64,000 bases of DNA from NCBI RefSeq assembly GCF_040938485.1, contig NW_027272244.1, forward strand, positions 124,001 through 188,000, in the 5' to 3' direction. Origin of the DNA: Diadema antillarum. Its lineage: Eukaryota. A program made the position numbers and the translations under genes. Shown here piece by piece: positions 1-33,943 of this stretch. Numbering within the stretch: position 1 is the stretch's first letter; every line of letters starts with the position of its first letter. The notes below the pieces were generated by a model that saw only the letters and a list, made by a program, of their open reading frames with translations, was not told where the DNA came from and did not search any database.

Positions 1-120
1 GTCTGTAAGAGAGGCTAAGACAACAGTCGACCACACTTGCCAGCCCAGAATCAGACTTCCGAGACCAAATGTGGTCATAACACCACCGGAAAAACCCAGA
101 ACTTTTTGTTGAAATCTCAT
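1..120 (-). CDS. First coding exon (partial, runs off window) of MS4A/CD20-like tetraspan paralogue C: MRFQQKVLGFSGGVMTTFGLGSLILGWQVWSTVVLASLTD...
   Basis: ATG at 120 (gaaaccATG) is open for 40 codons to base 1. The N-terminus aligns with paralogue B (MFRQKFLGFTGGVM) and A (MGFRRSFIGFTGAV). Acceptor tttcttatag precedes base 188. Confidence 0.8.
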   Translation of the reverse strand, partial: MRFQQKVLGFSGGVMTTFGLGSLILGWQVWSTVVLASLTD

Positions 121-1743
121 GGTTTCTATTGCTGCTGCTGTTTCGTCTTCTCTTCTTGTCTCGTTCTCTCTCTCTCTATGGCCAATTCCTATAAGAAATA
201 AATATAAACATAGTTATTAGGATTTTTTTGGTATCTTAATTAAGCTATTTATGTATAATGTGGTCGTCTGTCTGTGTGTCTGCCTCTCTCTCTCTCTCTC
301 TCTCCCTGTCGCCATCTTGCATATTATGAAATGTAAGCTATAGACATTCGTGATGGCACTATACGAGGAATTTCGGTGTCACTTGAATACTGTGGATAAT
401 TTTATCCTCGATCACGTGAAAGTTACATCATTTTCTGACATTAAACCGACCATTTATGCTTGCTCTCAGTCACTTGTAGAGTTGGGCGTCGTATCACTGT
501 GAAAGATTTTTTTTTTCTTTTTGTTGAACCATGCTATTTGGTCTGCACTGTTGGCCAGAAGCCAATGCCTTGATCATATCCTGACCGCTCTCCTTAACCG
601 TGTTAACTTTCTAAAATTCCCTGAAATTCACGTTTACCTTTAGAACCACTGGGTGATATTAAGCTCATACTGGCTTAAATACCCTTGGAATCCTCTGCAG
701 TATAAAAACATTATTTTCCTTTATGTTCTACCACCATCATGACATCCCTATCTCAGGACTGGCAGCAACTCGTTATGATCTAGAGCATGGGCAAGACAGA
801 AGAAGAGGGGACGTATACTGTTTAAAAATGCTAACAATGTGAGAATATTCGAATCCAAGACCCTCCTGTTCAAGTCCATAATAGCGTTTTCATCATACGA
901 CGGGGGTCCCTTGAGCAGTGAGATCAGAGGCACAAGATGAGCAATGCATACCTTTACACACTCTGACAATATCAAGTTTCGGCCAAAACTTCGAATGAAG
1001 TAACTCCCAATTGACGAATGCCCTTTCCATCTGTCTTCAAGTAGCTAGTCGTAAGGTACAAAATCATTTCAAAGTAGTATTACATTTTCTTTACATCATT
1101 TTTTGATACACGAAGTCACGAATTGTTGTAGTTGTCTCGTCCAGCAAAGGCAGCACCGAACCTTAAACAAAGTATAACCTTTAAAAGGATACACCGATTT
1201 TCCTCAAACCTCAATTAAGTTAGTAATTAATGTATGCATAACACTCTGCCTTTCTTAGGAAGTAATATTCTAGATAATATGTATGATTCATCTTTAATGA
1301 ACTTAAGAGTAAGCCTGCTAATGCATACATTGAATAATTGTCAACTGCCTGAATTTCTGGAATCTTTATTTTAGAAAAAAAAATTGAAATAGATCTAATA
1401 TTCAACAAGACAGAATGATATGTATCACATACCCCCAAAGCTAGACTACGAATATTAAAAAAACACTTTGATATTTTTATGGCCCCAAACCTTGAACTTC
1501 TCTTTTTTGTTGACATTGGATGCTTAAAATTCAACTTCGTTTGTCCCAGTACGCTCTTTACAAAAAGAAACAATACATGATGTGAAATCCGCAACATTAA
1601 GACCGACAGCGTGGTTGTTGAACATGGCCTCATTTTTCAATTTCTTAAATTTGTCATAATTTCTTTTTTCTTTGCTGGCACCCTATTTATTTTCTACTAG
1701 ATGCTGCCCCTATAGTCTTGTTAGTGCTTTCTCTGTCTTTTAT

Positions 1744-1996
1744 AAACTCCAAACTCCAAACTCCAAATTTTATTGTCCAAGAAAGGAAATTCTTTTTGCC
1801 CAATTGATCGTGGGCCCGGCAGCCACTGAGCAGCGCCAGATCGACGTTGCTCTAACCTTTTCAACTGTTGAACGGCAAACAAGGTAGCAGCAACTCCCAT
1901 CTTTTAACGTGTTTTGGTATGACGCGGCCGGGGTTTGAACCCACGACCTCCCGATTGTGAGGGCAGCCGCTCTACTCACTGAGCCAACACATCGGT
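1744..1996 (-). mobile_element. tRNA-derived SINE with conserved central domain (Meta-domain-like) and (TTTGGAG)n tail
   Basis: Minus strand shows A box TGGCTCAGTGAG and B box GGTTCAAACC, then GTCATACCAAAACACGTTAAAAGATGGGAG..., ending in about 3 copies of TTTGGAG. Confidence 0.75.
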
Positions 1997-2239
1997 ATGT
2001 TTGATCTGTGTGTGTGTCTGTGCGCGCGAACATGGAAAGTTTTGATATTACATTACGATCTTGTGTGAATACGAGATATGCATCGTCAGACATTTGTATA
2101 CATGTAGGAGTGTCTGGTAGCTCAGTGCTAATGAAATTTGTCATCTCTTTGATCACTTAGCTGAAATATCATAATCTTAAGGTCAAGAAGTACAGGTCCT
2201 TACAGTCCCTTAACACAATTCAGGAAAGAATAATAGAAA

Positions 2240-2650
2240 GTATGATAACATTAGCTAAAAAGAAATATTATGAGAAAACTTTAGCTGATAGTACTGGGAA
2301 TAGTAAAAAAAGACATGGGATGTGATAACTAATGCCTTAGGGAAAACGGGCAATAAGAAAACAACCATTACATATATCAAGTGTGATAATGAAACAATTA
2401 TAAAGGAGAAAGAGATTTGTAATTAATTGAATACATACTTTGTTAATATTAGTTGCGATATTAAGTCGTCTTTTGATGATTCAGATGGGTATGATTATCT
2501 TCAATATGTTACAAAAGTTGAGTCAACCGCATTTTTAAAACCAATTACATGTAAAGAAATAATTGATGTTGTAACGATTTTTAAGAATGATGTCAGTGCT
2601 GGCTACGATAATATTGATATGCGAATTATGAAAAGAGCTATTCTTCTTTG
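2240..2650 (+). mobile_element. Decayed L2/Crack/CR1-group LINE ORF2 fragment (endonuclease-RT linker)
   Basis: AKKKYYEKTLADSTGNSK(fs)KTWDVITNALGK...ICN*LNTYFVNIS...FLKPITCKEIIDVVTIFKNDVSAGYDNIDMRIMK, with a frameshift and a stop. Confidence 0.75.
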
Positions 2651-3494
2651 CTTTGGTGAAATAAAGAAACTTGAAACTTGAAGTATAGATGAGGAAAAGA
2701 AATTGGTGAGAAGAAAATAAAGTATGCGAGGGAAACTTGGTATGCCTTTAATGATGCGGAAATATATTAATGAATTGAAATATTTTAAATAGTTTAGGTA
2801 AAGGTGTGTTCTAACGTTTATCACTTTGATTGATAGTGCGCGACGGGGTCTTTGCGAGGGGATAGATTAGTTTTATAATGGTTCTACTATAAGTAGGCCT
2901 ACGTCTTTCTCTGTGGCTTATTGTTAACGCCTACTCTTTTCTCCATTACTTACTGCTAATGCCTACGATTTGTGATTACATAAATAATAACATGGTACGA
3001 ATATACTAGGGAATCTTATGATGACTAAATGTGATTTATTGAAGTGTACGACTGGGATGTCAGTGGGACCGCAGAACTACACCGAAAGGGAGGAGGTAAG
3101 GAAGGTTATACAAGAAATTTTGTGTATACATCTGAAATGTATGCTATGATTCTCGGGATATGAACCGATTGATGTCCTTTGATTTATCATTGTTCACTGA
3201 CTATTGTTTGTAAACATTCAAGATGAATGTGTTGTTATGTAAAAGATAATAAAGATCGTTGAAAAACAAAAACACAGTTGCTCAGGCAGTGTCAGGTGCA
3301 CTTACTTGCGTGCGTGCAGCAACGAAATCATTCTAATTCCCTCAATGCATACTCTATTGTGGTATACTTTGAACACTTAGAAGACATCATTAAAAAAATA
3401 ACCTTTCTTATAATTGTTGATTACATGTCTGATTAGAGAAGTATATGGCAGACTTTGTTTTCATCTTATGGTACTATGCGTTCTATGAACCAAT

Positions 3495-3578
3495 TATTGT
3501 TATTATCATTATTATCATTAGTAGTAGTAGTGTTATTTTATTATTATTGATATTATTATTATTGTTATTCTTCTTCTT

Positions 3579-3609
<31 letters not shown>

Positions 3610-3645
3610 TTATCATTATTATTATTATTATTACTACTACTACTA
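3495..3645 (+). repeat. Compound trinucleotide microsatellite (ATT/AGT/TTC/TTA/CTA blocks)
   Basis: Directly visible; explains the poly-I/S/F/L ORF 3445-3678. Confidence 0.95.
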
Positions 3646-3869
3646 TTTGGGGCCTACTTCCTCATCCGAAAACAATAGCAGCCTCGGAGTTGTGATGGTA
3701 AATAAAACCATGAAAATAGTTCCGGTGATATTTAAAAGTACAGGCAAAGTGGCAGCCTCTCAAAACATTGTTGGGTTAAATCATCATTTTTATTTTTAAA
3801 TTGAGAAAGCAACAACGTCAACAATCTTGAGTTTTACTAGTGATATTATTCTGTGACATACGTTAACAA

Positions 3870-4655
3870 TAACATACGTTATGCCGACGACACCACGCTG
3901 TTAGACCTGGTATTTGATAAGCTACAAATTTCTACACAAAAACTGGAAGAAGCATGTAAAGCATGGGGAATGAAAATTAACATCTCAAAGTGTCGAATAA
4001 TGTCTAGCGAACAAGGCGACAGCACAATAGATGATGAAGCGATAGAAAAGACAGACAAATTTGTCTTCCTTGGCAGCACTGTCCCATCAGTTACAAATGA
4101 TGTTAAACGAAGGACTACCCTTGCAGCCTGGGCTTTCGGCCGTCTCAAAGGAACAATTATGGTCAAACCAAAACATCTCGAGAACCTTAAAAGTGAGAAT
4201 ATATAAAGCTCTCATCCGACCAATCGCCACTTATGGTGCTGAAACATGGACCCTTACGAAGGCAGACACAAGCAGACTGGAATCCTTTGAGATGAGATGC
4301 CTCAGGACCCGTATTGCAGGCGTTCAGCTTCTCGACCACATCAGGAATGAGGACATCAGGAAGTCTCTGAACGCCAAAAGATCCATCAGCCAAGAAATCA
4401 CCTCACGCAGAATGAAATGGTTTGGGCATGTCATCCGCATGCCAGAGAATCGACTGCCACGTGAAGCTTACTATAATGACTTCCACACAGCACGACCACC
4501 TGGTCGTCCTCCCTCCAGATGGAAAGACCAACTTCGCTGTGATACGGGATCAACTCTACTGAGCCTTGAAAACCATGCAAAGGACAGGAGAGGTTGGGGT
4601 GAGCTCACCCAGAGGAGTGCAAAGGGACACACAGTCCTACGCCTTTAAGTAAGTC
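3870..4655 (+). mobile_element. 5'-truncated RTE-clade LINE, C-terminal half of reverse transcriptase with one frameshift
   Basis: IRYADDTTLL...WGMKINISKC...KFVFLGS continues after an extra base near 4160 into WSNQNISRTLKVRIYKALIRPIATYGAETW...FEMRCLR...WFGHVIRM...PPGRPPSRWKD. Stop at 4648 followed by taagtaagtc. Confidence 0.9.
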
Positions 4656-5491
4656 ATTATTCTGTTTTTCGTCATGACACCTTAAATGATAGGGCCTTTA
4701 TAAGTCAAGAAAAATGTAACAATACGATTGGCAATGAACATCACAATAATAGTTTCAGTATACGACGTACATCACCATTCATTCAAAACGTATTTGCATT
4801 TCAGAATCGATGGCAAGACTTTGAAAATTGGTGCTATTAATTTAATAAAATTCAATAATAACACTAATATAATGTTACGCCTACTACTAGTGAAAATAGA
4901 AGCAGAAGACACAATAGTTGTAGTAACAATTATTCAATATCAATGGTAATGATTATTCAAGTTTTGTTATTATTTATAGTGGCGGTAGAATCATAAGAAC
5001 CAGTATACGTTAACCTAACGTCGGTAAAAAAGACAGTAATTTTAAGATCATAGTCTTGTCATCTGGTGCATAAGATAGGAACCTATTACTGTCGACAGCT
5101 GTGGGGTTGACGTAGGTTGTCAAGATACTTACCTGAATCTTATAAAGAACGGGTTAATAATTATGGTAGTTGTCATGATGACCAGAATACGTCACAAAAA
5201 GAAAACAGGTGTCGTATAGGGTTAGAAGATTTACAACTAGTGTCTTTAGATTCGTAGGTGTTATGAGGGTATTGACTGGTATAAACACTGGATTTACGCT
5301 AATAGACTGGAGTAGTTACACATTGCCGCGAACTGTTGCCGAATGTCAACATTAAATATGTAATAATCTAGCCGTTTGAAAGGAAGTCCTTCAAAAAACA
5401 GTTTACAACATGATGATTATAAAGTAAGGGACTAAACATGCCAATACCAACACTCTGATACTTTTCAGTTTAAATTATCAAAATTTCTCAC

Positions 5492-5648: not shown

Positions 5649-6892
5649 GATCGGAACTAACAAACTGAGGGTAGGCGGAATGCGGTCTGATTTGGAAGAA
5701 AAGGCTTGTTGTGAAGAATTAGTAATATTGAATAATCTGTGGCTGTGTATAGGAGCATAATACATTATGAATCATTGAATCTAAATAATTCAAAGCATGT
5801 ATTCCATTACTGTTAATTATGCTACGAAATTCAATATCCTCTATGCATTATATCAAATCGCTTCTCTCTCTCTCTCTCTCTCTCTCTTTCGTGTGTGCTA
5901 TGTATTACAGTCATTGAAATCTAACAGTGCAAGTCTGCCTATGATATCTTACATGTAATTTCGCGTAAACACTTACCTCTTAAATCGGTTTCCACTGGTG
6001 TATGTTTGATTCTACCCCACAGACCAAGATATTGGATTTCACATCACTCTTGGCTCATTCTGATTTAATAAGAGGGGCCCCTTGAACGGTCTGAACAATT
6101 CGTGAATTATAAGCGGGAGCTATGTGATCTCGACTGGTTTGCGAGCACGAACCACATTTTTTATGGTATGTGCCTCCCTCCCCCCCCCCCCATTTCTCAC
6201 AACAGGATCTAAACATCAAGAGATATAAGAAGTAGACGATCTAAAACATTAAAAATAGAACGTTAATCTGCACCTCCCCACACATACATACAAACAATGA
6301 TTTTAATTAAAATGATCTATAGATTTTACAGTTCCTAACAAAGTAATGCCATGTACAACACGTGATCTTGACTGCAATGAACATCATTGTGTCTGTTATG
6401 CTGACTGCATATTCCTTTACCACAAAAATGCTAAGAATGCCAGTTATTTCTATTCACCCCTTTCTTTAGTATATATTTCAATGTATTATATAGACCTACC
6501 CATCTTGTGTGCTTTTTCATAAGGATTGTTGTTTGTGGCAAACCAGTGAACTGCAGAGTGTTAATTATTGTATACTTCTCCTGAATATAATTATTTCATT
6601 AGAAAGCCTCTTGAATAGGTGAACATCATTTTGTTTCGATGTTCTGAAAAGATGAATTGTCCGTTATAATTAGGTGGAATTAGTGACTGAAAAAATAATC
6701 ATATCTACACCATTTATGTTCGTCTTTTGACAGTCATGAAACGATATAAAATTCCATCATTATTTTCATGTTTTCATTGGCCAAACATAATCAGAAGCGC
6801 TTGTCTTACCTTCATAAAAAAGGCAAAACCAATACATGTACTTGTATCCTTGGAGTGCTTCATCTTGATCAGAGGGAATGTGTACCTCCCCC

Positions 6893-6913
6893 ACACACAC
6901 ACCACACACACAC

Positions 6914-6960
<47 letters not shown>

Positions 6961-6962
6961 CA
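6893..6962 (+). repeat. (CA)n microsatellite
   Basis: Directly visible; source of the HT/CV-repeat ORFs at 6727-7075. Confidence 0.95.
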
Positions 6963-7620
6963 CGCCCTAACAAACACACATACATCACAAACATACACAT
7001 ACACACAAAAAACCCACACACATAAAGTTTGGTGGCGTTAGCAATACATGATATATTATCCTTCAAATTGTTCAACTGCTATGGCGTCATTGATTTTTGA
7101 TGGACTATTCATCGATGACAGCACATAAATATGACATGATGCAAGAAATGATTGTACCATAAGTTTGACGGGGGAACAATAATCAAAACAAGACCAAAGA
7201 TATTGGTTGTACATGCGCCAGATTGCCATTACTCACATATGTCTGACGGAAGCAGGGCAGTGTTGTCTCATATTGTGGCATTGTACTCAAAATCTCTTTT
7301 GAATGACAGTCACATATTTTCTATTCTCTTCCAGGAAGTTGAAATTTTCGTTGTTCCGGAAGAAGAACTCAAGCGAGTGATAAATTACTAGCAAAATTTC
7401 TAATATTCCAATCACACAAATTCGGGTAAATACGCCGAAACACGCCCAAAGAATATTGTCTGGTAAGCTATATTTAAAATCGGTGCAGAGGCAAAGAATA
7501 TACGTATATTAATTGACATTAATATTGTGTCCATTATAACGACATTGCTATTGCAAACTGAGACCATTTTCCTCAAAGAGTGTTTGCGGACGATAAGAGA
7601 TGTAGTGTATAAAATATCTT

Positions 7621-20397: not shown

Positions 20398-20900
20398 GAC
20401 TGTTACAACAACAACAACAACAATAACAACAACAAACAATTGTTATTGTTGTTGTTTTGTTATGGGGTTTTTGTGTGGGGGGAGGGGGTCTTTATGATTA
20501 TCATTTTTATCAAGAAAGCAGCATACAATAAGTGTATTGTTCTTTATTTGAGCAGTAAGTGCGGCATGGCATTAAGTGTTTTCTTTTTGCATATTGGATT
20601 GCAAAACGCTCTTTGAATAAACAATAAATTAAATGTACGCAAATGTCGTCACGTAGGTCTTATAGTGTCACTTATCAATGCAAATGGGATCATGCAAATA
20701 TCTGTGCCAAAGGAAAACACAACTGCGTATGCCACTTTTTTCTTTCACTATTGTCTTGTTTGATCTCTTTTTTTTTCTTTGTTTTGCTATTTATAGTTTG
20801 TTCTTCTTTTTCATTTCAAAGTTTTGTTGCCATTCTTGTATTCGTTTTTCAGATTTTCTTCGAAGTGCCGACACGCATTGAGTAAAGTACGCCACCAACG

Positions 20901-21056
20901 ATGGGTTTTCGCAGAAGTTTCATCGGCTTCACGGGGGCTGTGCAGATTCTCCTCACCATGGCCGTATTTTCGCTTACTACTGATGTCGTGCTATCGGTTC
21001 CAGCACCGGCCGAAGAAAACCACGCCAGTGGAATCCCGCTCTGGGGTGGTCTCATT
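20901..21056 (+). CDS. Paralogue A coding exon 1 (MGFRRSF...GIPLWGGLI)
   Basis: ccaacgATG; donor ATT|GTAAGT; upstream acceptor tttttcag near 20852. Confidence 0.85.
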
Positions 21057-22193
21057 GTAAGTTTGTTTGCTGCCCTCCACGACAGCTGATGATCAGAAGG
21101 AGTTGCGCGAGGCATTTAAACAATATCATGTTTACTTTTCTGTTCATGTGCTCGACCTATTTTTATCGTTTTTATACTTTTTTTTTCTTTTGTGGATTCT
21201 TGAGGGTCTTAACTTTTGATTTTTTGTTTTATCATTTTTTATTTTTATTTTCTTTTTAATTCTCACATTTGCGGTGGTAAATGCATTTGTTACTATTATT
21301 TTTTGATTTTATTATTATTTCTTTTTAGCGAGTTCCATTTTTTCTTAGGCCTTAAACATGACGCAAAAGGAAAACATTACAGTTTCTAACATTGGAGGAC
21401 GGTATACGAAGATATCCTCATAATGCTGTTTTATTCGACATAAAAGTAGCGGCTACCAGACATGAAGGAAGCAAATACCAGGTCAATAGCCGACGTTGCA
21501 TATTATGCATGACGTGATGTCTGGGAATGATATAGTAAATAAAGTGTCCATGCAATACTTAACAAATGAACTCACTCTTACTACTGGGAGAGACCTGTTG
21601 AATAGAACACAAACAGTATACACAATCAGTATTTTGAAAAACTTATTTATTTTATCATAAAGTACAATAGATGTACACATTTCCTTTACTAATGTTTCTG
21701 ATGGATGTTAAGGGTGATATCTTTCCCCCTGCTTTCTGGAAGAGGCAATTCAAGTGCTCTTTTTATCGTAAGGGAAAAGTGATCATGTGTTGAATTTTCA
21801 TTATATTTTCCTAGTTTCCTTCTACTCATGTATTGTGACACCACAAACCATAGTAGTCTTCTCATCAAACGGTATGAACACTTAAACTTTAAATCATAAC
21901 CTTTCACCGGTATGTCCGATTTTCCTCAAACTTTCTCTGATGTGTTCTACAATCTAAATATTAATGCATCCTCTCAATCCACCTTCTGCATTAGAAAGTG
22001 AACTTGTCCTTCTTTCGCTAAAGATTATCTCTCGTTGCTTGACTTCCTCTAGATACTGATGTGCGGTGCTGCGAACCTCGTGTCAGTTTTAGGCGGCAAA
22101 AAGAAGAAATCCAAGAACTCGTTTCTACCGGTAAGGAATGATCCATCACAGCAATGAAGTTCAGTCTCTCCCCAACCGCCCCCCTCTCTCTCT

Positions 22194-22244
<51 letters not shown>

Positions 22245-22674
22245 TTATGGATATCATTAAGATATGAAATGTAACTGAAATACATGATGCTTGAACATTT
22301 GCATGCAATAAATAACATAGATAAATCAACAAATGAATAGATAGACATACTTATAAGTAGGCCCATTTATAGGCCCAACGTGGAGTTTATAATTACAATT
22401 ATCATAAAAATTATGAATATGGTTGTGCTTATCATTGGTTCAGGTAAGGCTATCTATCGGTAAAAGGACAGTTTGAAAGAATTCTATGCACTTAAATTCG
22501 AGTAATCTGCAGCCTGAGTACTTTGAGATTCATGCACATGTAAGTTTTGTGATGATTTGTTAGAAATTGTTATCCACACAATTATTCTTTCTAGGAAGCC
22601 AAAGGCCAATGGTGAAATGCTAAACAAGTCGTGAAAATAAATAAATACATAAATATATAGACAAAGAAATGATG

Positions 22675-22714
<40 letters not shown>

Positions 22715-23484
22715 TAATATTAAGTAACAATAAGAAGAAGAATAAAAATAATAAGCATAAGAATTTGAATAGGAAAAAAGAATAAAATAAACAAGGATAT
22801 TTTTGTCAGGTACCAGTAGTGGACAGACCTGACAAGGAAGAAACGGTCATTGTATTACTTTCTAAGTTCTGAGTAGTTTACGACGTCTAGGGAGCTACAT
22901 AATTAATTATACTTTCAAGCTTCTAAACATATCAATACTTAGAAAATACTAGCGCAGTAATAACTTTGCTGTCGCTATGTCATACCAACTGATGGCAGGT
23001 CGCTGCACTTTTCTTGCTCAAACCCAAACAGTCTTTTTTTTTATTATGGTATTTATGAGATTGAAATAATATCACCAAACGGTAGTTGAATACGACCACC
23101 GAACGATACCTTCCTATGGCTAATGCTTTATTACTTTGAAATCGACACAGATCTCACTGTCAAGTTTCATGGCCAATACCGTGGCGTTCCTGACATCCAG
23201 CGTTGTGATTGGTCTCTTCAGTTGGGCTATGGCTGAGGACGTAACAGCCAACTCGAGTGCTGAGGTCAACCACAACATCTACGTGATTTCTTTTGCTACC
23301 GTGATCGCCGCCATGTCTATCATCTGTATCTTGTCTATGATGGCGCTTTTTGCTGACTGCTTCACCGTTTGCTTCAGCACGCCTTCCCTATCGCAGGTAA
23401 TAGAATGCATTGAAAGTGTCGTCTGTTACGATTTTGAGGCGATGCTACAAAATGAAAAAAGAAGAGAAAGGAAGGAATGAAAAC

Positions 23485-23515
<31 letters not shown>

Positions 23516-24374
23516 TGTTGTTGTGCTTTGGTATGCAATCCTAAATCAAAAGAGTACAGTGTAAAAGATTAGCAACAACAATAACAAATCATAATTATGT
23601 AAATTTGCAATTGCCTTATATCACAATGTCATAATGGTTTTACAGGATTTTGAGTAGAATTGAGGTTAGGCAAAATAAGTCATCTAAAAATTGGCAAAAA
23701 GAATAACTTTGGCTTTGATTGTTTTTCTTTGTTTTAGTATTCTTACATAATACAATAATTATAATCATTACGTGAATGATATCGTGGAGGACTGAAACAC
23801 ATTTAGATATGAAATAGAGAATTAGAGAATGAGAAAATCAGAGAAAGGAAAGGAAACACGTATTAATTCGTTCAGGCTGTCATTCACTCAGCAAAGACCA
23901 TAATGTTATGTCACTTTTTTCTCTCACTATTTTCGTTTGACAGCACCCTTACCCCTTGGACGGCTATGATATGCCCCCTCGTTATCCACAGATGCACCCG
24001 GGTGCTAAACTCTACTAGGCGGACCGACGGTTCAACGTGGTGATATCATAATCCTTTCTACATGCTGTCAACTTTGCAAAAATCGAGAAATATGTTAAGG
24101 AGAAGAGATTTATTTTCTTGGGTGGATGCACAAACGTCTTTAACTCTATAACTTTATTGTGTAAGGCGCATTTCACATAAGTCGAAAAAGAGGTCGCGTC
24201 GAGCCCGCAGCACGCTATACCACTGTCGGTCGCACGACTGAGCGACTTCTCATCTGAAATAAACAAGCGCATTTTTTTTTTCATAAGGGTATCGAGATTT
24301 ATTTCGAATCCGAAGTCTATGAGTCGTGCCACCGAAAGTCGTATGGTGAGCGGCGAACTTTAAACTCGACTTAG
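20901..24374 (+). CDS. MS4A/CD20-like four-TM protein paralogue A, join(20901..21056,22053..22130,23151..23396,24288..24374), 188 aa
   Basis: GT-AG exons, all phase 0, four hydrophobic helices, GIPLWGG motif starting TM2, basic loop KKKKSK, DCFTVC after TM4. The last exon is less certain. Confidence 0.8.
22053..22130 (+). CDS. Paralogue A coding exon 2 (ILMCGAANLVSVLGGKKKKSKNSFLP)
   Basis: cttcctctag| ... CCG|GTAAGG; 78 nt; homologous to B exon 2; not in the ORF track. Confidence 0.85.
22197..22241 (+). repeat. (CA)n microsatellite in paralogue A intron
   Basis: Directly visible. Confidence 0.95.
22675..22712 (+). repeat. (TAA)n microsatellite
   Basis: Directly visible. Confidence 0.95.
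23151..23396 (+). CDS. Paralogue A coding exon 3 (TM3-loop-TM4)
   Basis: cgacacag| ... CAG|GTAATA; 246 nt; homologous to B exon 3. Confidence 0.85.
24288..24374 (+). CDS. Paralogue A probable last coding exon (GIEIYFESEVYESCHRKSYGERRTLNST*)
   Basis: T-rich acceptor tttttttttcataag|, open in phase 0 to TAG; no homology support. Confidence 0.5.
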   Translation, partial: GIEIYFESEVYESCHRKSYGERRTLNST

Positions 24375-26056
24375 GTGAGTTTGACATGGCACGAGTTTTC
24401 CACTCTGCTTTAGGCTGAAGAGGACATCGGGCATGTCGGGTGTCACATAAAGACGCAGTCAATCACAATCTTCTCATATGCAAGTCGGCACACAGTACCA
24501 TTTTACACCAGCATGCTATCTTCTTTTGATACGGAGAGTGACAGTTTTGCTGTTTGGAAATCTTGAGGAAAGTAACGCCTCTTTTCTTTTCAATGGATAA
24601 TTACAGATTCGGGTGTTTTTCCCCCTTTAGACAAATATTGAACATTGCAACATCTGCATCTACCGTCATACATGGTAAAGCAAAAAATATACATAGACGG
24701 CGGCTAAATCTTTTCTCAAACTATTGTTAGATTCCAAAATTGTTATTTGCATAGCTTTAACTTGATACCTGCACGTATTAGGTGTTTTCTTTCCTAATTG
24801 TCACTAAAGCAACGTTTACAGGTTACGTACATGCATCGAAAGGTATGAAATGAACTTATCCGAAATCAAGTTGGCATGTGAAACTTGGAAGTACTTTGTC
24901 GATCGCATACTAACAATTATAACTACTATGTTTTGAATAAACTGTGACTGTGTTTGGTTAAAGTAAGATTTTAAATGTTGCACGATTTCTTATGAAATGT
25001 CCAAGTATCAAATTATATGATTTAAAAAAAAATCAAATACTTTAGAACAATATCAAAACTTAATTGTAAGTTCTGTCAAAAGACTTTCATGATATTTTGA
25101 GAATACAATTTTGGTTGTACAATTCTTTATGCCATATCTAGTATATGAAAGTAAACTAAATATAGTATATTGTTGGTGATTTGTCTTTTTGTAGTGTACT
25201 AACGTATATTATTCGTGTAGCCGTCTACATTTTAGGGAAGAAAAAAAAATGTGAAAAAGTGTTTTTCTTGCTTTTATACAAATTGTATACAAAAACTGTA
25301 GTTTAATTGTCAGGTGATCTATTTAGCAAAAAGTATTGATGAAACAGTGTGTATTATGATGTAAAGCAAGCGACTGCTTCAAACTATTTATCTTCCCTCT
25401 GATCAGAGTTTGTATAATAAAACTACTTTCCTTTTTTATTTTCATACAAGCCTTTTTAGCATTTTACCATTTTATCAACGACCCGTCGTTATTCTTCTAT
25501 ATTGACGGCAATTGTACAACACGATTGTTTATGATCAGTCAGGATTAAAATCACCTGCAGTAGGGAACTATTTACTTTGTTTATATTAGGAATATCCCCT
25601 CAGATTAAAGATATTGAACTTGGCTATTGCCGACATGTGGAAATCACAAAATAAAATAAATCTTGTTTTCATAATATTCATCAAAATGTTCACGTTGAAG
25701 GGGAATATTCTGTTGCAGCATCAACTCAAGGATAATTCTCCATCGAAATGTTGTTTTGTCAGTAGATGGTTATTTGAGAGCAATATAAACAGTCTACGTT
25801 GTGATTACGTTGGCTTGTAGTGGTGTTAAATTGTAAGCTTCGGATGATGCATTCTTTTTGAATAAGAGAGAATTAAGACTCAAAGTTCAAACTTGCTAAT
25901 TGTGGAGTTTAAATTTGTATAACGTCTTCCTCCAAAACTGTACTTTGGCCAGGTCCTTTTGGTACACAGGTGAAACAAGAAATATTATATCAATAAATTT
26001 GTAGCTATAATTTATGTTATCACCCTCGTGGTATTTACCGCTTCCTTGTATTAGTG

Positions 26057-26198
26057 NNNNNNNNNNNNNNNNNNNNNNNNNNNNNNNNNNNNNNNNNNNN
26101 NNNNNNNNNNNNNNNNNNNNNNNNNNNNNNNNNNNNNNNNNNNNNNNNNNNNNNNNNNNNNNNNNNNNNNNNNNNNNNNNNNNNNNNNNNNNNNNNNN
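26057..26198. other. Assembly gap
   Basis: Run of N. Confidence 1.
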
Positions 26199-27876: not shown

Positions 27877-27912
27877 TCACACAGCAAAGACACCGCTCAT
27901 AAATTTATTTAC
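27877..27912 (-). CDS. Paralogue B probable last coding exon (VNKFMSGVFAV*)
   Basis: Strong acceptor ctttctttgttcttacag|; phase 0 to TGA. Confidence 0.5.
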   Translation of the reverse strand, partial: VNKFMSGVFAV

Positions 27913-29296
27913 CTGTAAGAACAAAGAAAGTTGAAAAGAATCAAATGAGGACGCGTGGATTTTTGTTTACGGGGCAGTTTAAGAAGTTTTTTTAGTGGGA
28001 TTTAAACAAGTCATTCCTCAATGATAGTGGCACCCCTTCAAACCTTCAGTCAATTCAAGAGTTAGATGAAACAATTACGCACGCTTAAAACAAAGGCAGA
28101 CCGGTCACTCTTTCTTTAAAAGAACAATGTTACTACAATCAAGCCAATCGATCAAGTAATCAATAAATGTAATACAGTCATATACACGTAAACGTCTGCG
28201 CGTGTACATTACAAACCTATATCTTGTCCTTGTTTAAGTTCGTTCATGCTTTTAATCATTCATCTTCAATAATGGTTACAAGATGAAATGTATAAATTAA
28301 GAAAAAAAAGATATGCTTTTATGCGCCATTTGGTTACTCGAACTTAAGGATAATCAGATTATTCAGAGTTTTTTTTTGTGCTTTACTGTTTTGTGCCGCA
28401 ATGTAGAATTGGGCAGACCCATCAGTTGATGGAATTTAGCAGTTAATGTTTCAAATTAAGTCAATCATTGGATTGATTATTACCTGCTTTTTTACGCCTT
28501 GTAAATGGCTGGAACCTGTCGTGGTGGGTAGTCGTAATATGAGGGCCTTGGCTGCAAAGTAAAAGCAAATGATTTTACATGAAATGGTTTTGTCAGTTAT
28601 CGCCTGAAATTATAATTTCACCGCATAATTATTATTAGCATCATCATTCATGGATTATTAATACCATGAAAATGAAATCGCTGAATTGTTCACAATCGCA
28701 GACAAAAGTCATGCATCCATCATAGTTATAACAAAATTGTTTAGTTCTTTGAACTGTGAATACAACCACAAAATTATAATTTGTTGTACATATAAAGTAA
28801 AATGTATGAAATACATACTGTATGAAATCTTGATACTTTGCTGCGATAAAATAGAAATAATATGTATAAATATACATAACCGAGTAGATGCGACACCAAT
28901 GGACTTTGCTGTAAATGCATTATAAACCAGTTTGACAAATTTTCTGGATAGGCTTTTACGTCATAAAAGTCTCTCACCTCGGCAGGGGGGCCGAACGATA
29001 GCGAGCAGCAGTCCACGAACATAGCAGTCATCGACAGCACGAGGATAAAGATGGAGGCGATGACGACGGCGGTGTAGAGCTCGACCGCGGCTTCCTCCCC
29101 GGCTTGCACGCCGTCATCGAGCGTGGCCCACGCACCCCACGTCAAGAAGCCGATGCAGAGGGCAGCAACGAGAAGGGCGACGAAGTTACACAGGATGACA
29201 GTGAAGGAAAACTGCAGGGATAATCGACAAATACAAAGAACACTGATTATCACATGATTCTGTGGTAATGGATAATACAGTAACTAGGGTAAAAGG

Positions 29297-29332
<36 letters not shown>

Positions 29333-31322
29333 CGCACGGGCGGGCACACAAACACAAACAAATACATGCAAACACTGGTCATTACTGTAGTAAAAGTCAA
29401 TATTCAGCTAAGGATAAACCGCTACACACACACGCACATAAATGAAAAAAAAAACGAACAACATTGATTATCACTGTGGTAAAGGTTAACAGTAACTATA
29501 GGCCTACATGAGCAATTAAAGAGGTAAATCACACACACGCACACACACACCCACACACAGAAAGCAAACACACAAAAACACTAATCATTACTGTGATAAT
29601 AGTCAATGTTACTGGAGCAGCTACCCAGCTTTAAACTAAAACAACAACAACGACGAGGAAGACAATTACAACAAACCATTTATTATGTAGCATTTTTCTT
29701 ACTCAATCTTTTCCATTCTTTTCTTATTCCATGTATTGATTGATAACAACACAAAAAAGAACCTGTTAACATATACATCAGGTCTACTTTATGGTCCGAT
29801 TCTGGACACACCGTCATGTCAAGTCCTAGACCAACTTACTAATACTAACAACAGTAGACAAGTTACCTGGCCTAAATAAATTATGTAAAACAAAAGAAGG
29901 TGACTCTTGCAAAAGTATACGACAGCATGGCAGCTTAACTTATCAGTGTTCAAAATAATCACATGCTTAATCAAATACATTTATTTTAAAAGTCATACCA
30001 CTCCTAAACGTGATATTAAAGGGGATTTATTATAATACACAACACTCCGATTTGATAAACTCAGTCATTGAAAAGACGATTTATGTTCCAAAGAGTAATC
30101 TTATTTCGTTTTGTTTTCTTGCTTGTAGTTCGTTTATTTCTTTTCAGCTTAGATTCTCTTCGTGTGTGCGTACAATGCAAGAGTGTGTACAATGTATATA
30201 AACTGGACATGTGTGTCCCTACAATGTACAATGTATGTTTGCTTGTGTCTGTTTGTGTGTGGGGGGAGATAAATCATGCCGAGCGTTTTCAGGCATTTTA
30301 CTTTGTGGAAAATTGCCAAACAGCTCTCTCCCTCGTATTCGACAATAGAGAGTATAGGTGTGTCACGGACGTCTACGAAAGGGAGGCGCCCAAAGTCTTT
30401 GTGTGCAAAATCCCCCTTGAATTATTTAATAAGGCAGGGTGAGTCAACACACTGGTTTAAAGGTATAGTTTAGCATTGGGGGCAGTGATTTTGAAAATGT
30501 TCGATTTATCACATAATGCATATGTGTAGGTCAGTTGTATCAGACAACATCCTGCCATCTAAAGATGTCACAACATAGCCTATAGTAAGGAGATATCACT
30601 GTATTTGGCGATAAACTATTAGTGTAGACGGTTTATTCTAGAGACAATTCTAATAAAATTATTGCTCACATTTTGTATATTTCACAATACTTTACATTGA
30701 TTATACTGAGTTACATTTTTACATTGGTTGTTTCTATTACTATCTCACATTTTAGGAATAATCTTAGGCACCAGAGGAGGGTTTTTGTTTCATCTGCAAA
30801 CGGTAAATAATATCTTTAACAGGAATAAAACAAAAAGGCATGGCGATTCATTGGCGAACAAAAGCAGAAGCAGGGAATGTACCGGTTGAAGATTATGGTG
30901 GCGCCACGTAATGTTTGCAGACGAGTTTAAGCACACAACGAGTTAAATGAATTCTTGGTGATTTGAGATATTTGCAAACACAGGCAATAAGAAAATGTTG
31001 GGTATTATTATCATAACATCTAGAACATTCTGTGTCTATGTAACAATCAAAGGAAGGGATTTATTTTGCTCTATCGGATGGTGGACTTTATACTTGGAAG
31101 TGTTTCAATATCCCGTTNNNNNNNNNNNNNNNNNNNNNNNNNNNNNNNNNNNNNNNNNNNNNNNNNNNNNNNNNNNNNNNNNNNNNNNNNNNNNNNNNNN
31201 NNNNNNNNNNNNNNNNNNNNNNNNNNNNNNNNNNNNNNNNNNNNNNNNNNNNNNNNNNNNNNNNNNNNNNNNNNNNNNNNNNNNNNNNNNNNNNNNNNNN
31301 NNTGATTTATGTACTTATGTAC

Positions 31323-31357
<35 letters not shown>

Positions 31358-33647
31358 TTCATTCATTCATTCATTCATTCATTCATTCATTCATTCATTC
31401 ATTTCCTTACCGGCATCTCATCTACTCGATGCTTCCTCTTTCTGTCGAAAGCCTGCACCAAGTTCGCACAACCTGTCATCACAAACTGGACACAGAGAAA
31501 GAAAGAAAAAGGATAATAGAAGACAGTGCATTCATTTCTGTCTGCATTATTGTTATCTTATACGATGTAATCACACTGTGATATCGAAACAAATTAATTA
31601 TAACAGGTGCATTCAAGACCGGTCATTTCATTTCTATTTGTTGTGAAAAAAAGAAAATAAACAACTGCAAATTCGTCGCACTTGCATCAAATAGAGGCAT
31701 ATGGCAATCAGAGAAGTAATATGCAAACGAAAAGAGCAATAACAAAGTGTATACTGGAAAGGAAGGACAGCACAAATAGCAGAGTTTCAAGAGAGGCACA
31801 AAAAGGGTATTGGCTGATGTGGATGATCCTTGTTAGCTCCATGCTTCAGTGAAGAATGCTTATAGTGACAGTATAACGGTAGTAGCATAAATTATGTAGT
31901 AAACTAGTAGTGGAAGCAACCGCAGAAAGATCAGAAACACAGTCTCACAGTTCCTTGTACCATATACATGTATGTCCGAGGTAACTCGACAAAACATTCT
32001 ACAGTAGCCTGGTTAGATGTGAATACGGCGGTAAACTGTATTCAAATTACTGCAAACGATTTCATCACTTAAGCTTTCATAACCATCATGCAACTTGATG
32101 CTATTCAATATCTGTCATTATGTTCAAGTGAGCGTAAATTTACGTTTTCTTGTCGCTTCATTTTGGGCATTCGTGTTGCCATGTTCTTTGATAAATATCA
32201 CACAGTCATGTTTCGGTGTTTTGTCGGGGAGTGTTGTAGTTGGACTACAAATCTTTGGCATATTTTTCATGAATAAGCCAAACATCGACATAATATTACA
32301 GAATTAATTCGCATACCATGCATGGCATGAACTCGGGGAATGCATAAGCTGTCAAATATACACCCTTGGGTAGCCTACATAGTTATTCCCACGTCTTTGC
32401 CTTCATAATATTCCCGATTGTTGAGCAAACAAGACGGTAAGTTCGAGCGAGTCAACACTTCTGCACTCGACAAATTTGAAGAAGAAAATGGGGATTTTGT
32501 GCAAATACATGCAAATACAATGGACAGTCTGTAGACTGGTATACAAATGGGGTGTGTTACACTGTATGTCCTGAATAATTAATATACAGTGTATGTAAAG
32601 GGCACAGGTATTCTACAATGCCGTGACAGAGCAGACTGAACGAAATTTTTTTACTGTTTCGATGCAGTGAGGTTTAGATGTAATCAACAGTACAGGGGTT
32701 CTTAGCTGTGGATTTCAAAATCAGAACAGGCATATACATGTATCGTGCAAACGCACAATTAATCATGTACTTGAACGTATTTGTTTTGAATGTTGCCAAT
32801 TTGTATGAAAAAAAAGACAAACGTTATCATTAAATTGTACAGCACTGGGAAGTTTCAAGCTTCTGTACTATTTTGCTCACTATATATCTGGCTTAAACAC
32901 TTCTGTTAAAAGTTACATAGCTTTGAAAAGTATAAGCCTACAGAATGATTTATAAAAGGGCTCATGGGTTGCGGAATCGAAATCATGTGGCACACGGGGG
33001 TGGGGGGGGGGGGGTCATATATACACCGTGGCACACAAAGAGTAAGCACATTGGACATAGAATGCACACAAACTCATACTGACAGTCCTTTAACATAGAC
33101 CTAGCACATGCAGTCATAACGCACCTTTAGTCCAGCACTGACGCAATCATGCATGGTGCTGTATATACAGTGTATAACAATGTTGTTTTGTTGAATTTAA
33201 TCAAACAAGGAATGGAAATTTAGCTAATTAGTCGATGTTTATATAAGGGGATGCATTCCACTACAAATGCAAATCACGAGATGTCCTCGCCATGTTTTCT
33301 TAATTACAAGGAATTACAAGGAAGCCAAAACGCAAATATGAATGTGGGGTGAGTGAAAACAGCAATATGAGTAGAATCCGTCAGCTGAAGTATGAAGAAA
33401 ATTGGACAATTCATTTAAATGACATCATTAATGATAACAAACAGAAATGGAATGTAAGGAGAATTCCCCAAATTGTTTCACCGCAACCTGCCAACTGATT
33501 TGCACTCACCAAGAGACCACACCAGAGCGGTACTCCAGCGGCGGCGTGTGAGAATGTTGCCGGGGCATTCGTGCCTTGGATGCTGAGGATGATCCCGTAG
33601 GCGATCATCACGCCTCCCGTGAATCCCAGAAACTTTTGTCTGAACAT
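27877..33647 (-). CDS. MS4A/CD20-like four-TM protein paralogue B, complement(join(33510..33647,31411..31485,28978..29211,27877..27912)), 160 aa
   Basis: Same phase-0 exon layout as A; GVPLWCG motif, GCANLV, basic loop RKRKHR, FVDCC after TM4. The last exon is less certain. Confidence 0.8.
28978..29211 (-). CDS. Paralogue B coding exon 3 (TM3-loop-TM4)
   Basis: atccctgcag| ... GAG|GTGAGA; 234 nt. Confidence 0.85.
30457..30819 (+). mobile_element. TTAA-flanked MITE (ttaaaggta...tctttaa) in paralogue B intron
   Basis: TTAA at both ends with short imperfect TIR; second copy at 20034-20397. Confidence 0.65.
31118..31302. other. Assembly gap
   Basis: Run of N. Confidence 1.
31322..31404 (+). 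repeat. Compound (ATTT)n(ATTC)n microsatellite
   Basis: Directly visible; abuts the donor of B exon 2. Confidence 0.95.
31411..31485 (-). CDS. Paralogue B coding exon 2 (FVMTGCANLVQAFDRKRKHRVDEMP)
   Basis: tctctgtgtccag| ... CCG|GTAAGG; 75 nt; not in the ORF track. Confidence 0.85.
33510..33647 (-). CDS. Paralogue B coding exon 1 (MFRQKFL...GVPLWCGLL)
   Basis: ggcacaATG; donor TTG|GTGAGT; acceptor cactttacag before 33690. Confidence 0.85.
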
Positions 33648-33943
33648 TGTGCCGAGTCTTAGTGATATAAATCAGAAACACAAAGTCCCTCTGTAAAGTG
33701 TTGTCTTGTGTTTACAGAATCAGCCCCCTGAAAGAAAAAGCAAACAAACAAACAATTAAGAAAACTGTATGTCACATAAAACAGTATTTTGTAGGAAATA
33801 CCGCTCACATGAAGAAAAAGACGCCTTCAGAGCCTTCTTCCTCTCTTTATTGCTCGAATGATGAGTATGATGATGATAATGATGGTGATGATCATCATAA
33901 TGATAATCAGGGAAATAATGACAGGGACACTATGATGACAATT

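What the first reader, a model, noticed from the sequence alone, without database searches (positions are those of the whole stretch)
1..33690. Tandem cluster of three divergent MS4A/CD20-like tetraspan genes in an invertebrate
Seen: paralogues A (+), B (-) and C (-, partial) share an M-x-F-[RQ]-x-[KS]-[FV]-[LI]-G-F-[TS]-G-[GA]-V start. A and B share G-x-P-L-W-x-G, G-x-A-N-L-V, a basic inner loop, D-C after TM4 and identical phase-0 intron positions, while the extracellular loops differ completely. Established: G-x-P-x-W-x-G at the start of TM2, clustering and fast-evolving loops characterise the MS4A family (CD20, FcERI-beta, necklace chemoreceptors), which is mostly studied in vertebrates. 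Inference: a lineage-specific expanded receptor or chemosensor array. The short exons mean most of it is invisible in the ORF track.
Basis: partly seen in the sequence, partly recalled or inferred. Interest (0 to 1): 0.75.

Follow-up and report, generated by a model that had tools for sequence, protein, structure and literature searches.

The report
Sea urchin CD20-like tetraspan gene cluster
The window (sea urchin Diadema antillarum) holds two complete genes and one cut-off gene for very small four-pass membrane proteins that are distant relatives of the vertebrate CD20/Fc-epsilon-RI-beta (MS4A) group; they belong to an old family of a few genes, found only in echinoderms, not to a recently expanded receptor array.

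Summary
Observation confirmed, with corrections. All introns are GT-AG and phase 0. Gene C (-) starts at 120 and runs off the window. The exon translations equal the NCBI proteins XP_071478257.1 and XP_071478250.1 ("uncharacterized protein", Diadema antillarum). Both assembly gaps lie outside coding sequence.

The CD20-like reading is supported at superfamily level:
- A family profile finds only Fc-epsilon-RI-beta (E 1e-6) and CD20 (E 4e-4) below E 0.1 among solved structures.
- One long paralogue passes Pfam's CD20 cut-off. A and B themselves do not.
- Predicted folds rank Fc-epsilon-RI-beta, CD20 and the dystrophin-complex four-pass chain (sarcospan by inference) first.

Membership of MS4A proper is not shown. 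The proteins have almost no N-terminal tail, and no phylogeny against TMEM176, sarcospan or ENTREP could be run.

The "lineage-specific expanded chemosensor array" is not supported. Diadema has four clustered genes plus one distant long paralogue. A and B have orthologues in Lytechinus (A also in Strongylocentrotus), with conserved gene order, and relatives occur in all five echinoderm classes. The outer loops do vary most.

No RNA reads were available for this species. The function is inferred: probably a small membrane adaptor.

The parts
20901..21056 (+). Gene A exon 1 (52 codons): short basic N-terminus, TM1, outer loop 1, start of TM2 with G-I-P-L-W-G-G
   Evidence: Sequence and GT donor. 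Equals residues 1-52 of P0030. On its own it hits Pfam CD20 at E 0.008.
22053..22130 (+). Gene A exon 2 (26 codons): rest of TM2 (G-A-A-N-L-V) and lysine-rich inner loop
   Evidence: AG/GT borders, phase 0. Identical to P0030.
23151..23396 (+). Gene A exon 3 (82 codons): TM3 with the invariant Asn, outer loop 2 with an N-S-S sequon, TM4, D-C after TM4
   Evidence: 95% identical to D. setosum P0001.
23944..24018 (+).
   Evidence: tblastn at 100% identity to the P0001 tail. AG acceptor.
33510..33647 (-). Gene B exon 1 (46 codons): N-terminus, TM1, outer loop 1, G-V-P-L-W-C-G
   Evidence: equals P0032.
31411..31485 (-). Gene B exon 2 (25 codons): rest of TM2 (G-C-A-N-L-V) and basic inner loop
28978..29211 (-). 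Gene B exon 3 (78 codons): TM3, outer loop 2, TM4, D-C-C
28492..28551 (-). Gene B exon 4 (19 codons plus stop): tail Y-Y-D-Y-P-P-R ... I-Y-K-A
1..120 (-). Gene C, first 40 codons of exon 1 (ATG at 120). The rest lies beyond the window start.
   Evidence: 85% identical to exon 1 of a complete 183-aa gene at the matching place in D. setosum.
26057..26198 (.). Assembly gap in the spacer between the 3' ends of A and B. Not coding.
   Evidence: Position relative to the stops at 24018 and 28492. The spacer is 4.47 kb here and 4.46 kb in D. setosum.
31118..31302 (.). Assembly gap inside B intron 2, beside microsatellites. Not coding.
   Evidence: The exon 2/3 junction is uninterrupted in P0032, P0002, P0004 and in the cDNA-like contig L004.

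Best explanation
A, B and C are members of a small, old, echinoderm-wide family of minimal four-pass membrane proteins, 168-186 residues in the short members. The family is a divergent branch of the CD20-like (MS4A / sarcospan) superfamily.

Shown:
- The exon structure.
- Identity to the annotated proteins.
- Four long helices, with basic residues only on the N-terminus, inner loop and tail. This gives N-in/C-in topology.
- TM helices that are far more conserved than the outer loops.
- Profile-level and fold-level similarity to Fc-epsilon-RI-beta, CD20 and sarcospan.

Inferred mechanism, about 40% likely: like Fc-epsilon-RI-beta and sarcospan, the protein does not bind a ligand itself. It acts as a membrane adaptor or auxiliary subunit.
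- The conserved helix bundle (invariant Gly in TM1 and TM2, Asn in TM3) packs against itself or against partner receptors.
- The cysteines just after TM4 are likely lipid-anchor (palmitoylation) sites.
- The short Pro/Tyr-rich tail recruits cytoplasmic WW/SH3/PDZ-type partners that control trafficking or turnover. Its motifs are P-P-x-Y in some members and a conserved aromatic-Lys C-terminus.
- The short outer loops (4-25 residues in the short members), free of basic residues, evolve at about the neutral rate or faster.

The confidence given (0.7) is for the identity: real four-exon genes of a CD20-like echinoderm family. It is not for the adaptor mechanism.
For: Gene models:
- Canonical phase-0 introns.
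- Exon translations equal P0030 and P0032 piece by piece.
- Single-ORF, cDNA-like contigs exist for a B-like homologue and for a near-identical relative of the Holothuria protein.

Family spread:
- 14 representatives at E <= 1e-3 among 1.84 billion proteins. The ten looked up are echinoderm or unlabelled; the named ones cover all five classes.

CD20-like relation:
- Pfam CD20 scores A at E 1.4e-4 across profile positions 3-147 of 156.
- Long paralogue P0011 scores 32.5 bits, above the 27.9 cut-off. It is related to A at E 1.1e-7.
- The family profile against the PDB improved as sequences were added. With 13 sequences: Fc-epsilon-RI-beta E 1.1e-5, CD20 E 8e-3. With 19 sequences: E 1.2e-6 and 4.2e-4. 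Nothing unrelated scored below E 0.08.
- Foldseek's top six hits for A and top four for B are Fc-epsilon-RI-beta or CD20.
- In the wide structural search, the dystrophin-complex four-pass chain scores Z 15-16 and Fc-epsilon-RI-beta Z 13.7-15.4. These rank first for both models.

Topology and conservation:
- In A, B and their sea-urchin orthologues, K+R is 2-5 in the inner loop and 2-3 in the N-terminus, and 0 in the outer loops of all but one.
- B orthologues keep 16-20 of 21-27 residues in each TM but only 2 of 12 in outer loop 2.

Age:
- The A clade has support 97/97 and the B clade 100/99, across sea-urchin orders.
- The order protease-B-A is kept in Lytechinus.
Against: - A and B themselves are below Pfam's CD20 gathering score. 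Some family members give no CD20 hit at all.
- Structural Z scores are only 1-3 units above unrelated helical bundles. Foldseek E values are about 5e-3.
- No RNA evidence from this species: the only runs found were DNA contigs.
- The adaptor function is inference only. P-P-x-Y is not conserved across the family (B lacks it). No partner, location or expression site is known.
- Zuccolo et al. 2010 (PMC2826416) judged invertebrate similarities to MS4A to be unspecific, although on different sequences.
Confidence: 0.7

Rival explanations
1. The genes are true MS4A-type chemosensors or immune receptors. In this reading it is a fast-evolving array whose variable outer loops bind ligands, as the first reader proposed by analogy with mammalian necklace-neuron MS4A receptors.
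For: - The outer loops are the most variable regions between paralogues and between orthologues.
- Between D. antillarum and D. setosum, 4 of 5 amino-acid changes in A fall in the outer loops. A shows 5 replacement changes against 1 silent change.
- One loop-2 site is also polymorphic between the two D. antillarum scaffolds.
- The genes are clustered.
Against: - Only four clustered genes plus one distant paralogue per Diadema genome.
- Clear orthologue clades and conserved gene order across sea-urchin orders.
- B is under strong purifying selection, dN/dS about 0.07.
- The loops are very short: 4-25 residues in the short members, and only 4 in loop 2 of the Strongylocentrotus and Lytechinus A orthologues.
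- A's replacement rate (1.2%) is still below intron divergence (2-4%). Relaxed constraint therefore explains the loops.
- No expression data.
Confidence: 0.1
2. The likeness to CD20/MS4A is convergence of small four-helix membrane bundles. In this reading the family is an echinoderm orphan with no common ancestry with CD20-like proteins. This is the view Zuccolo et al. 2010 took of invertebrate candidates.
For: - A and B score below Pfam's cut-off. B also gives equally weak hits to unrelated membrane families such as DUF308 and DUF373.
- Helical-bundle Z scores of 12-14 also appear for designed proteins and TTYH.
- PMC2826416 reported that short TM similarities recur in unrelated membrane proteins.
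Against: - The profile hits are full length and in register, at E 1e-6. They improve with more sequences and are exclusive to MS4A proteins among 177,635 PDB sequences.
- A paralogue passes the curated Pfam cut-off over 149 of 156 profile positions.
- The family's invariant residues (Gly in TM1, the P-x-W-G Gly in TM2, Asn in TM3) align with the same residues of Fc-epsilon-RI-beta.
- Two independent structure searches put CD20-like proteins first for both A and B.
Confidence: 0.12
3. The proteins form or regulate a cation conductance, as has been claimed for CD20 and TMEM176B. In this reading the conserved polar residues in the helices line a pore in an oligomer.
For: - TM helices are unusually conserved, with an invariant Asn in TM3 and an acidic residue at the end of TM4.
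- The proteins are related to CD20. The claim about CD20 conductance appears in the reference list of PMC2826416.
Against: - There is only one polar invariant residue within the membrane.
- From my own knowledge, the CD20 cryo-EM structures showed no pore.
- Nothing in the sequence was tested for conduction here.
Confidence: 0.08

Closest known systems
Fc-epsilon-RI beta subunit (MS4A2)
   Same: - Best sequence-profile match (E 1.2e-6, full length) and best Foldseek match for both A and B.
- Four helices, N-in/C-in.
- Shares Gly in TM1, P-x-W-G in TM2 and Asn in TM3.
- It is an auxiliary subunit rather than a ligand binder, which is the model proposed here.
   Different: - The urchin proteins have a 5-6 residue N-terminus instead of about 50 residues.
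- They have no ITAM in the tail. The tail is Pro/Tyr-rich and ends in aromatic-Lys-x.
- Identity is only 14-18%.
CD20 (MS4A1)
   Same: Profile match at E 4.2e-4. Foldseek ranks 5-6 for A and rank 4 for B. Same topology and TM2 motif.
   Different: - CD20 has a long outer loop 2 with a disulphide (my knowledge). Here loop 2 is 4-16 residues in the short members, without cysteines.
- The structural Z of 11-12 is no better than unrelated bundles.
Sarcospan (four-pass subunit of the dystrophin-glycoprotein complex)
   Same: - Top structural match for A and B: Z 15-16, rmsd 2.7-3.2 over 143-150 residues.
- It is a scaffold tetraspan (PMC11173052).
   Different: - No sequence-profile hit at E <= 10.
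- That the matched chains are sarcospan is inferred: it is the only four-pass subunit of that complex.
- Sarcospan has longer termini and a larger loop between TM3 and TM4.
ENTREP/FAM189 proteins (CD20-like domain plus P-P-x-Y tail that recruits the ligase ITCH; from my own knowledge)
   Same: - A CD20-like four-pass domain combined with proline/tyrosine motifs on the cytoplasmic side.
- P-P-R-Y in A, P-P-Q-Y in the brittle-star member, P-P-P-Y / L-P-P-Y in the crinoid N-terminal extensions.
   Different: - ENTREP tails are hundreds of residues long. Here the tail is about 30-40.
- P-P-x-Y is absent from B and several other members.
S. purpuratus 'outgroup' protein of Zuccolo et al. 2010 (GI:72131538)
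   Same: A sea-urchin protein found in searches that started from MS4A sequences and used to root the MS4A/TMEM176 tree (PMC2826416).
   Different: It is a 311-residue protein with a long Pro/Gln/Gly-repeat N-terminus. It is not this family, which starts its first helix at about residue 7.

Membership tests
CD20-like superfamily (Pfam PF04103) | Match to the Pfam CD20 model at or above its gathering score (27.9 bits) | tested here: inconclusive
   A scores 22.3 bits (E 1.4e-4, profile 3-147 of 156). B scores 18.3 bits. Both are below the cut-off. Long paralogue P0011 scores 32.5 bits, above the cut-off, and is linked to A at E 1.1e-7. 6 of 13 members hit CD20 at E < 1.
CD20-like superfamily (Pfam PF04103) | Four transmembrane helices with both termini in the cytoplasm | tested here: met
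   AlphaFold models have four helices of roughly 25-35 residues, pLDDT 77-79. Basic residues are confined to the N-terminus, inner loop and tail.
CD20-like superfamily (Pfam PF04103) | Family profile recognises experimentally solved members by sequence | tested here: met
   Fc-epsilon-RI-beta at E 1.2e-6 and 6.9e-6, CD20 at E 4.2e-4, full length. Nothing unrelated below E 0.08.
CD20-like superfamily (Pfam PF04103) | Fold closest to solved members | tested here: met
   Top ranks for both models in two search methods. The margin over generic helical bundles is small, 1-3 Z units.
MS4A proper (vertebrate MS4A1-MS4A18 type) | P-x-W-G-[GA] motif at the start of TM2 and L-G-x-x-Q-I-type TM1 | tested here: met
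   G-[IV]-P-L-W-x-G in A and B. It aligns with G-Y-P-F-W-G of Fc-epsilon-RI-beta, and F-T-G-A-V-Q-I aligns with L-G-A-T-Q-I.
MS4A proper (vertebrate MS4A1-MS4A18 type) | Cytoplasmic N-terminal domain of tens of residues before TM1 (my knowledge of the family) | tested here: not met
   TM1 starts at about residue 7 in A, B and C. Only the crinoid members and one long-paralogue model (D. setosum) have a 25-32 residue extension.
MS4A proper (vertebrate MS4A1-MS4A18 type) | Phylogenetic placement inside MS4A rather than with TMEM176, sarcospan or ENTREP | not testable with these tools
   No reference sequences of those families could be obtained by id. Both wide protein searches returned echinoderm proteins only.
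MS4A proper (vertebrate MS4A1-MS4A18 type) | Intron positions shared with vertebrate MS4A genes | not tested
   The urchin introns lie inside TM2, before TM3 and after TM4, all phase 0. No vertebrate gene structure was available, and a literature search gave nothing usable.
Expanded chemosensory receptor array | Large, lineage-specific gene expansion with rapid turnover | tested here: not met
   Four clustered genes plus one distant paralogue in D. setosum. Orthologue clades span sea-urchin orders. Gene order is conserved in L. variegatus.
Expanded chemosensory receptor array | Variation concentrated in extracellular loops under positive selection | tested here: inconclusive
   The loops are the least conserved parts. 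A has 5 replacement changes against 1 silent, and 4 of the 5 are in loops. The counts are tiny. A's dN is below intron divergence and B has dN/dS 0.07.
ENTREP-type ligase adaptor | P-P-x-Y motifs in the cytoplasmic tail | tested here: inconclusive
   Present in A (P-P-R-Y), in the Amphiura member (P-P-Q-Y) and in the crinoid N-termini. Absent in B, D and the Lytechinus and Strongylocentrotus A orthologues.

The most novel reading that the evidence does not exclude
The family could be the echinoderm sister group of vertebrate MS4A genes: a stripped-down ancestral form with no N-terminal tail. MS4A/CD20-type tetraspans would then predate vertebrates and adaptive immunity. That would contradict the published conclusion that invertebrates lack MS4A-like genes (PMC2826416). 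Its neutrally or adaptively evolving outer loops could mark a role as co-receptors at the cell surface of immune or sensory cells.
Probability: 0.2. Interest if true: 0.55.

Novelty: new member of a known kind. Interest (0 to 1): 0.35.

Why it matters
MS4A proteins (CD20, Fc-epsilon-RI-beta, the Alzheimer-linked MS4A4/6, olfactory MS4As) are medically important, yet their origin is unclear. The only dedicated phylogenetic study concluded that invertebrates have none. This work gives a clearly delimited, pan-echinoderm family of "uncharacterized proteins" with no Pfam assignment on record. It is tied to the CD20-like superfamily by profile, by one paralogue above the Pfam cut-off, and by fold. 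That supplies a concrete invertebrate outgroup for the superfamily and a minimal version of the fold, about 170 residues, for structure-function work. It does not by itself change what is known about how such proteins work.

Tried and rejected
- Pfam on single exons by reference. Only exon 1 of A gave a weak CD20 hit, so exons are too short to decide.
- The joined spliced models were never typed or sent to a search. That step was left out. The database proteins P0030 and P0032, which equal the exon translations piece by piece, were used by id instead.
- RNA evidence. The one run search returned three runs of unknown type. Laid on 20600-24400, they proved to be DNA contigs that cover introns and carry D. 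setosum-type alleles, with no splice joints. They left 22632-23520 uncovered, so they say nothing about expression.
- Profile search in the word-indexed database. It returned only echinoderm proteins, so no MS4A, TMEM176, sarcospan or ENTREP sequences were available for hhalign or a joint tree.
- Literature. No paper mentions the LOC identifiers of the orthologues. Searches for invertebrate CD20-like proteins and for MS4A gene structure gave nothing usable.
- More copies in the rest of the window. tblastn with three family proteins found none beyond A, B and C.
- The idea that the S. purpuratus 'outgroup' of Zuccolo et al. is this family was rejected. It is a different, 311-residue protein.
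- Positive selection on A was considered. It is not claimed because there are only six differences and dN is below intron divergence.

Full report
**What is in the sequence**

G-x-P-L-W-x-G and G-x-A-N-L-V each occur in the first two genes.

Reading the DNA gives these coding exons:
- Gene A (+): 20901-21056, 22053-22130, 23151-23396.
- Gene B (-): 33647-33510, 31485-31411, 29211-28978.

All borders are GT-AG and phase 0.

Both third exons end at a good donor rather than at a stop.
- A: 23944-24018.
- B: 28551-28492.

Gene C starts at 120 on the minus strand and leaves the window after 40 codons. tblastn with three family proteins found no further copy anywhere in the 64 kb.

**Identity of the genes**

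- The ORF holding exon 3 of A matched a 184-aa "uncharacterized protein" of Diadema setosum at 95% identity.
- That of B matched a 168-aa D. setosum protein at 99% identity, and also a Lytechinus variegatus protein.
- The 90% clusters of these proteins contain Diadema antillarum entries XP_071478257.1 (P0030) and XP_071478250.1 (P0032).
- Exon by exon, these two are identical to the window's translations.

So the window is D. antillarum. Both genes are already annotated with the four-exon structure derived here.

The joined step with typed letters was left out. P0030 and P0032 served as referenced stand-ins.

**Assembly gaps**

- Gap 26057-26198 lies in the 4.47-kb spacer between the two stop codons. 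The same spacer is 4.46 kb in D. setosum.
- Gap 31118-31302 lies in B intron 2, 108 bases past the donor of exon 2 and directly after (GAAT)n/(AAAT)n repeats.
- The exon 2/exon 3 junction is uninterrupted in the annotated proteins of D. antillarum, D. setosum and L. variegatus, and in a single-ORF Logan contig.

No coding sequence is therefore affected. I did not look up or fill the gap letters.

**Evidence for splicing and expression**

Laid on 20600-24400, they turned out to be DNA contigs. They span intron 1, carry the D. setosum alleles (for example T>C at 20986) and show no splice joints.
- There is thus no direct RNA evidence for this species.
- Indirect evidence comes from two short Logan contigs that each carry a complete family ORF without introns. 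L004 (SRR6173504) has a 169-aa B-like protein. L005 (SRR27504761) has a 173-aa protein that clusters at 90% identity with the Holothuria leucospilota family member.
- Each behaves as spliced mRNA, with the junctions where the window's introns lie.

**The cluster and its age**

On D. setosum chromosome OZ188188.1 the layout is:

| Gene | Strand | Length | Position |
|---|---|---|---|
| D | + | 186 aa | 44.955 Mb |
| C | - | 183 aa | 44.964-44.967 Mb |
| A | + | 184 aa | 44.987 Mb |
| B | - | 168 aa | about 44.994-45.003 Mb |

- That is four genes in about 50 kb, in alternating orientation.
- A fifth, long paralogue (339 aa) lies 1.7 Mb away.
- In L. variegatus the B orthologue is flanked by a Peptidase_S8 gene on one side and by the convergent A orthologue on the other.
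- The long Lytechinus paralogue sits 0.5 Mb away.
- A maximum-likelihood tree of 21 family members gives an A clade (Diadema, Lytechinus, Strongylocentrotus; support 97/97), a B clade (Diadema, Lytechinus and one unlabelled sample; 100/99) and a long-paralogue clade (100/100).
- The A/B duplication therefore predates the split of these sea-urchin orders.

An exhaustive HMMER search of 1.84 billion representative proteins found only 14 with E <= 1e-3. Ten were looked up. Eight are echinoderm proteins and two are unlabelled Logan assemblies. Together with later hits, the named ones come from sea urchins, a sea cucumber, a sea star, a brittle star and crinoids.

This is a small, old family found only in echinoderms, not a recent expansion.

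**Relation to CD20/MS4A**

Pfam:
- Singly, A scores 22.3 bits against Pfam CD20 (E 1.4e-4, profile positions 3-147 of 156). That is below the 27.9-bit cut-off.
- B scores 18.3 bits, alongside equally weak unrelated hits. The Lytechinus B orthologue shows no CD20 hit.
- The long paralogue P0011 scores 32.5 bits, above the cut-off. It is homologous to A at E 1.1e-7.

Family profile against all PDB sequences:
- The 13-sequence profile found Fc-epsilon-RI-beta at E 1.1e-5 and CD20 at E 8e-3.
- The 19-sequence profile improved these to 1.2e-6 and 4.2e-4.
- The alignments are full length and in register, and nothing unrelated scored below E 0.08.
- In that alignment the family's invariant Gly (TM1), the P-x-W-G motif (TM2) and Asn (TM3) face the same residues of Fc-epsilon-RI-beta.

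Predicted folds:
- AlphaFold models of A (pLDDT 79) and B (pLDDT 77) are four-helix bundles.
- Foldseek ranks Fc-epsilon-RI-beta and CD20 first for both, at E about 4e-3 and TM up to 0.63.
- The Foldseek-independent wide search ranks the four-pass chain of the dystrophin-glycoprotein complex first (Z 15-16), then Fc-epsilon-RI-beta (Z 13.7-15.4). Unrelated bundles follow at Z 12-14.
- I infer that chain to be sarcospan, the complex's four-TM subunit.

Each line of evidence is modest, but all point the same way. I accept a distant CD20-like relationship with about 0.8 confidence.

Membership of MS4A proper is a different claim:
- The N-terminal cytoplasmic domain is absent.
- No tree against TMEM176, sarcospan or ENTREP could be made.
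- Intron positions could not be compared.

**Protein features**

- Lys+Arg counts are 2-3 in the 5-6 residue N-terminus and 2-5 in the inner loop of A, B and their sea-urchin orthologues. They are zero in the outer loops of all but one of these. This gives the N-in/C-in topology of MS4A proteins.
- Between B orthologues the four helices keep 16-20 of 21-27 residues. Outer loop 1 keeps 6 of 11 and outer loop 2 keeps 2 of 12. In the A orthologues loop 2 shrinks from 14 to 4 residues.
- Just after TM4 every member has [DE]-C, usually [DE]-C-C.
- The tail is Pro/Tyr-rich and, in most short members, ends in aromatic-Lys(/Arg)-x.
- A true P-P-x-Y occurs in A (P-P-R-Y), in the Amphiura member and in the N-terminal extensions of crinoid members. 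It is absent from B.

**Divergence between species**

Between D. antillarum and D. setosum:
- A has 5 replacement changes and 1 silent change. Four of the replacements are in outer loops, three of them consecutive in loop 2.
- B has 3 replacement and 12 silent changes (dN/dS about 0.07).
- The contrast is nominally significant (Fisher p = 0.014).

A's dN (1.2%) is still below intron divergence (2-4%). Relaxed constraint on the loops is therefore the safer reading.

**Mechanism**

- Shown: a compact CD20-like four-helix membrane protein with a strongly conserved membrane core and short, poorly conserved outer loops that carry no basic residues.
- Inferred, about 40%: an adaptor or auxiliary subunit in the manner of Fc-epsilon-RI-beta or sarcospan. 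The helix bundle associates with itself or with partner receptors. The juxtamembrane cysteines are lipid-modified. The Pro/Tyr tail recruits WW/SH3/PDZ-type cytoplasmic proteins that control trafficking or turnover.
- Less likely: a ligand-binding chemosensor or immune receptor (10%), a cation conductance (8%), or a convergent orphan unrelated to CD20 (12%).

**Comparison with the literature**

- Zuccolo et al. 2010 (PMC2826416) searched S. purpuratus, noted "possibly related" invertebrate genes and concluded that invertebrates lack MS4A-like genes.
- Their sea-urchin outgroup is a different, 311-residue protein.
- No paper in the library mentions the LOC identifiers of this family.
- The family is thus annotated but uncharacterised, and no Pfam family is on record for its short members.

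**Verdict**

- The CD20-like reading is supported at superfamily level.
- The expanded-chemosensor reading is not supported.
- This is a new, divergent member group of a known kind, of moderate interest.

Noticed in passing
window 3853-4203 (+), wider 2400-4650: A decayed retrotransposon fragment lies in the 20-kb spacer between genes C and A. The ORF matches reverse transcriptase RVT_1 at E 1.4e-7, and neighbouring ORFs continue the reading in other frames.
   Followed up: partly
window 21616-21996 (intron 1 of gene A): A very high-copy interspersed repeat. Summed contig depth reaches 10^4-10^5 times the flanks in all three DNA runs, with many loose ends at 21913-21950.
   Followed up: no
window 20901-24018 versus 28492-33647: Silent-site divergence from D. 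setosum differs about tenfold between neighbours. A has 1 silent change in 131 sites and B has 12 in 121. Introns differ by 2-4%, up to 9% in B intron 3. This is unexplained. Possible causes are small numbers, deep haplotypes or local rate variation.
   Followed up: partly
window 28552-28977 (B intron 3): This intron is 426 bases here but 3.3 kb in D. setosum, so there is a large insertion or deletion between the two species.
   Followed up: no
window 23151-23396, codon 116 of gene A: D. antillarum has two scaffold copies of the locus (228,653 and 585,809 bases), probably haplotypes. Their A proteins differ only at residue 116 (Glu/Gly) in outer loop 2. The same stretch differs from D. setosum.
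   Followed up: partly
window 31303-31410 and 6880-7000, 22150-22330, 29290-29370: Microsatellites. (GAAT)n/(AAAT)n abuts the gap in B intron 2, and (CA)n/(TG)n runs appear in several introns and spacers.
   Followed up: no
L007 1-2915 and window 40359-52050: The Peptidase_S8 (subtilase) gene next to B is also next to the B orthologue in Lytechinus variegatus. The order protease-B-A is therefore conserved.
   Followed up: partly
L003 262-6313 and 23788-27788 (D. setosum): The distant long paralogue (339 aa) lies between a TIR-domain gene and a RIC3 gene, 1.7 Mb from the cluster.
   Followed up: no
proteins P0017, P0029 (crinoids): Crinoid family members carry a 25-32 residue N-terminal cytoplasmic extension with L-P-P-Y / P-P-P-Y. 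The sea-urchin short forms lack it.
   Followed up: no
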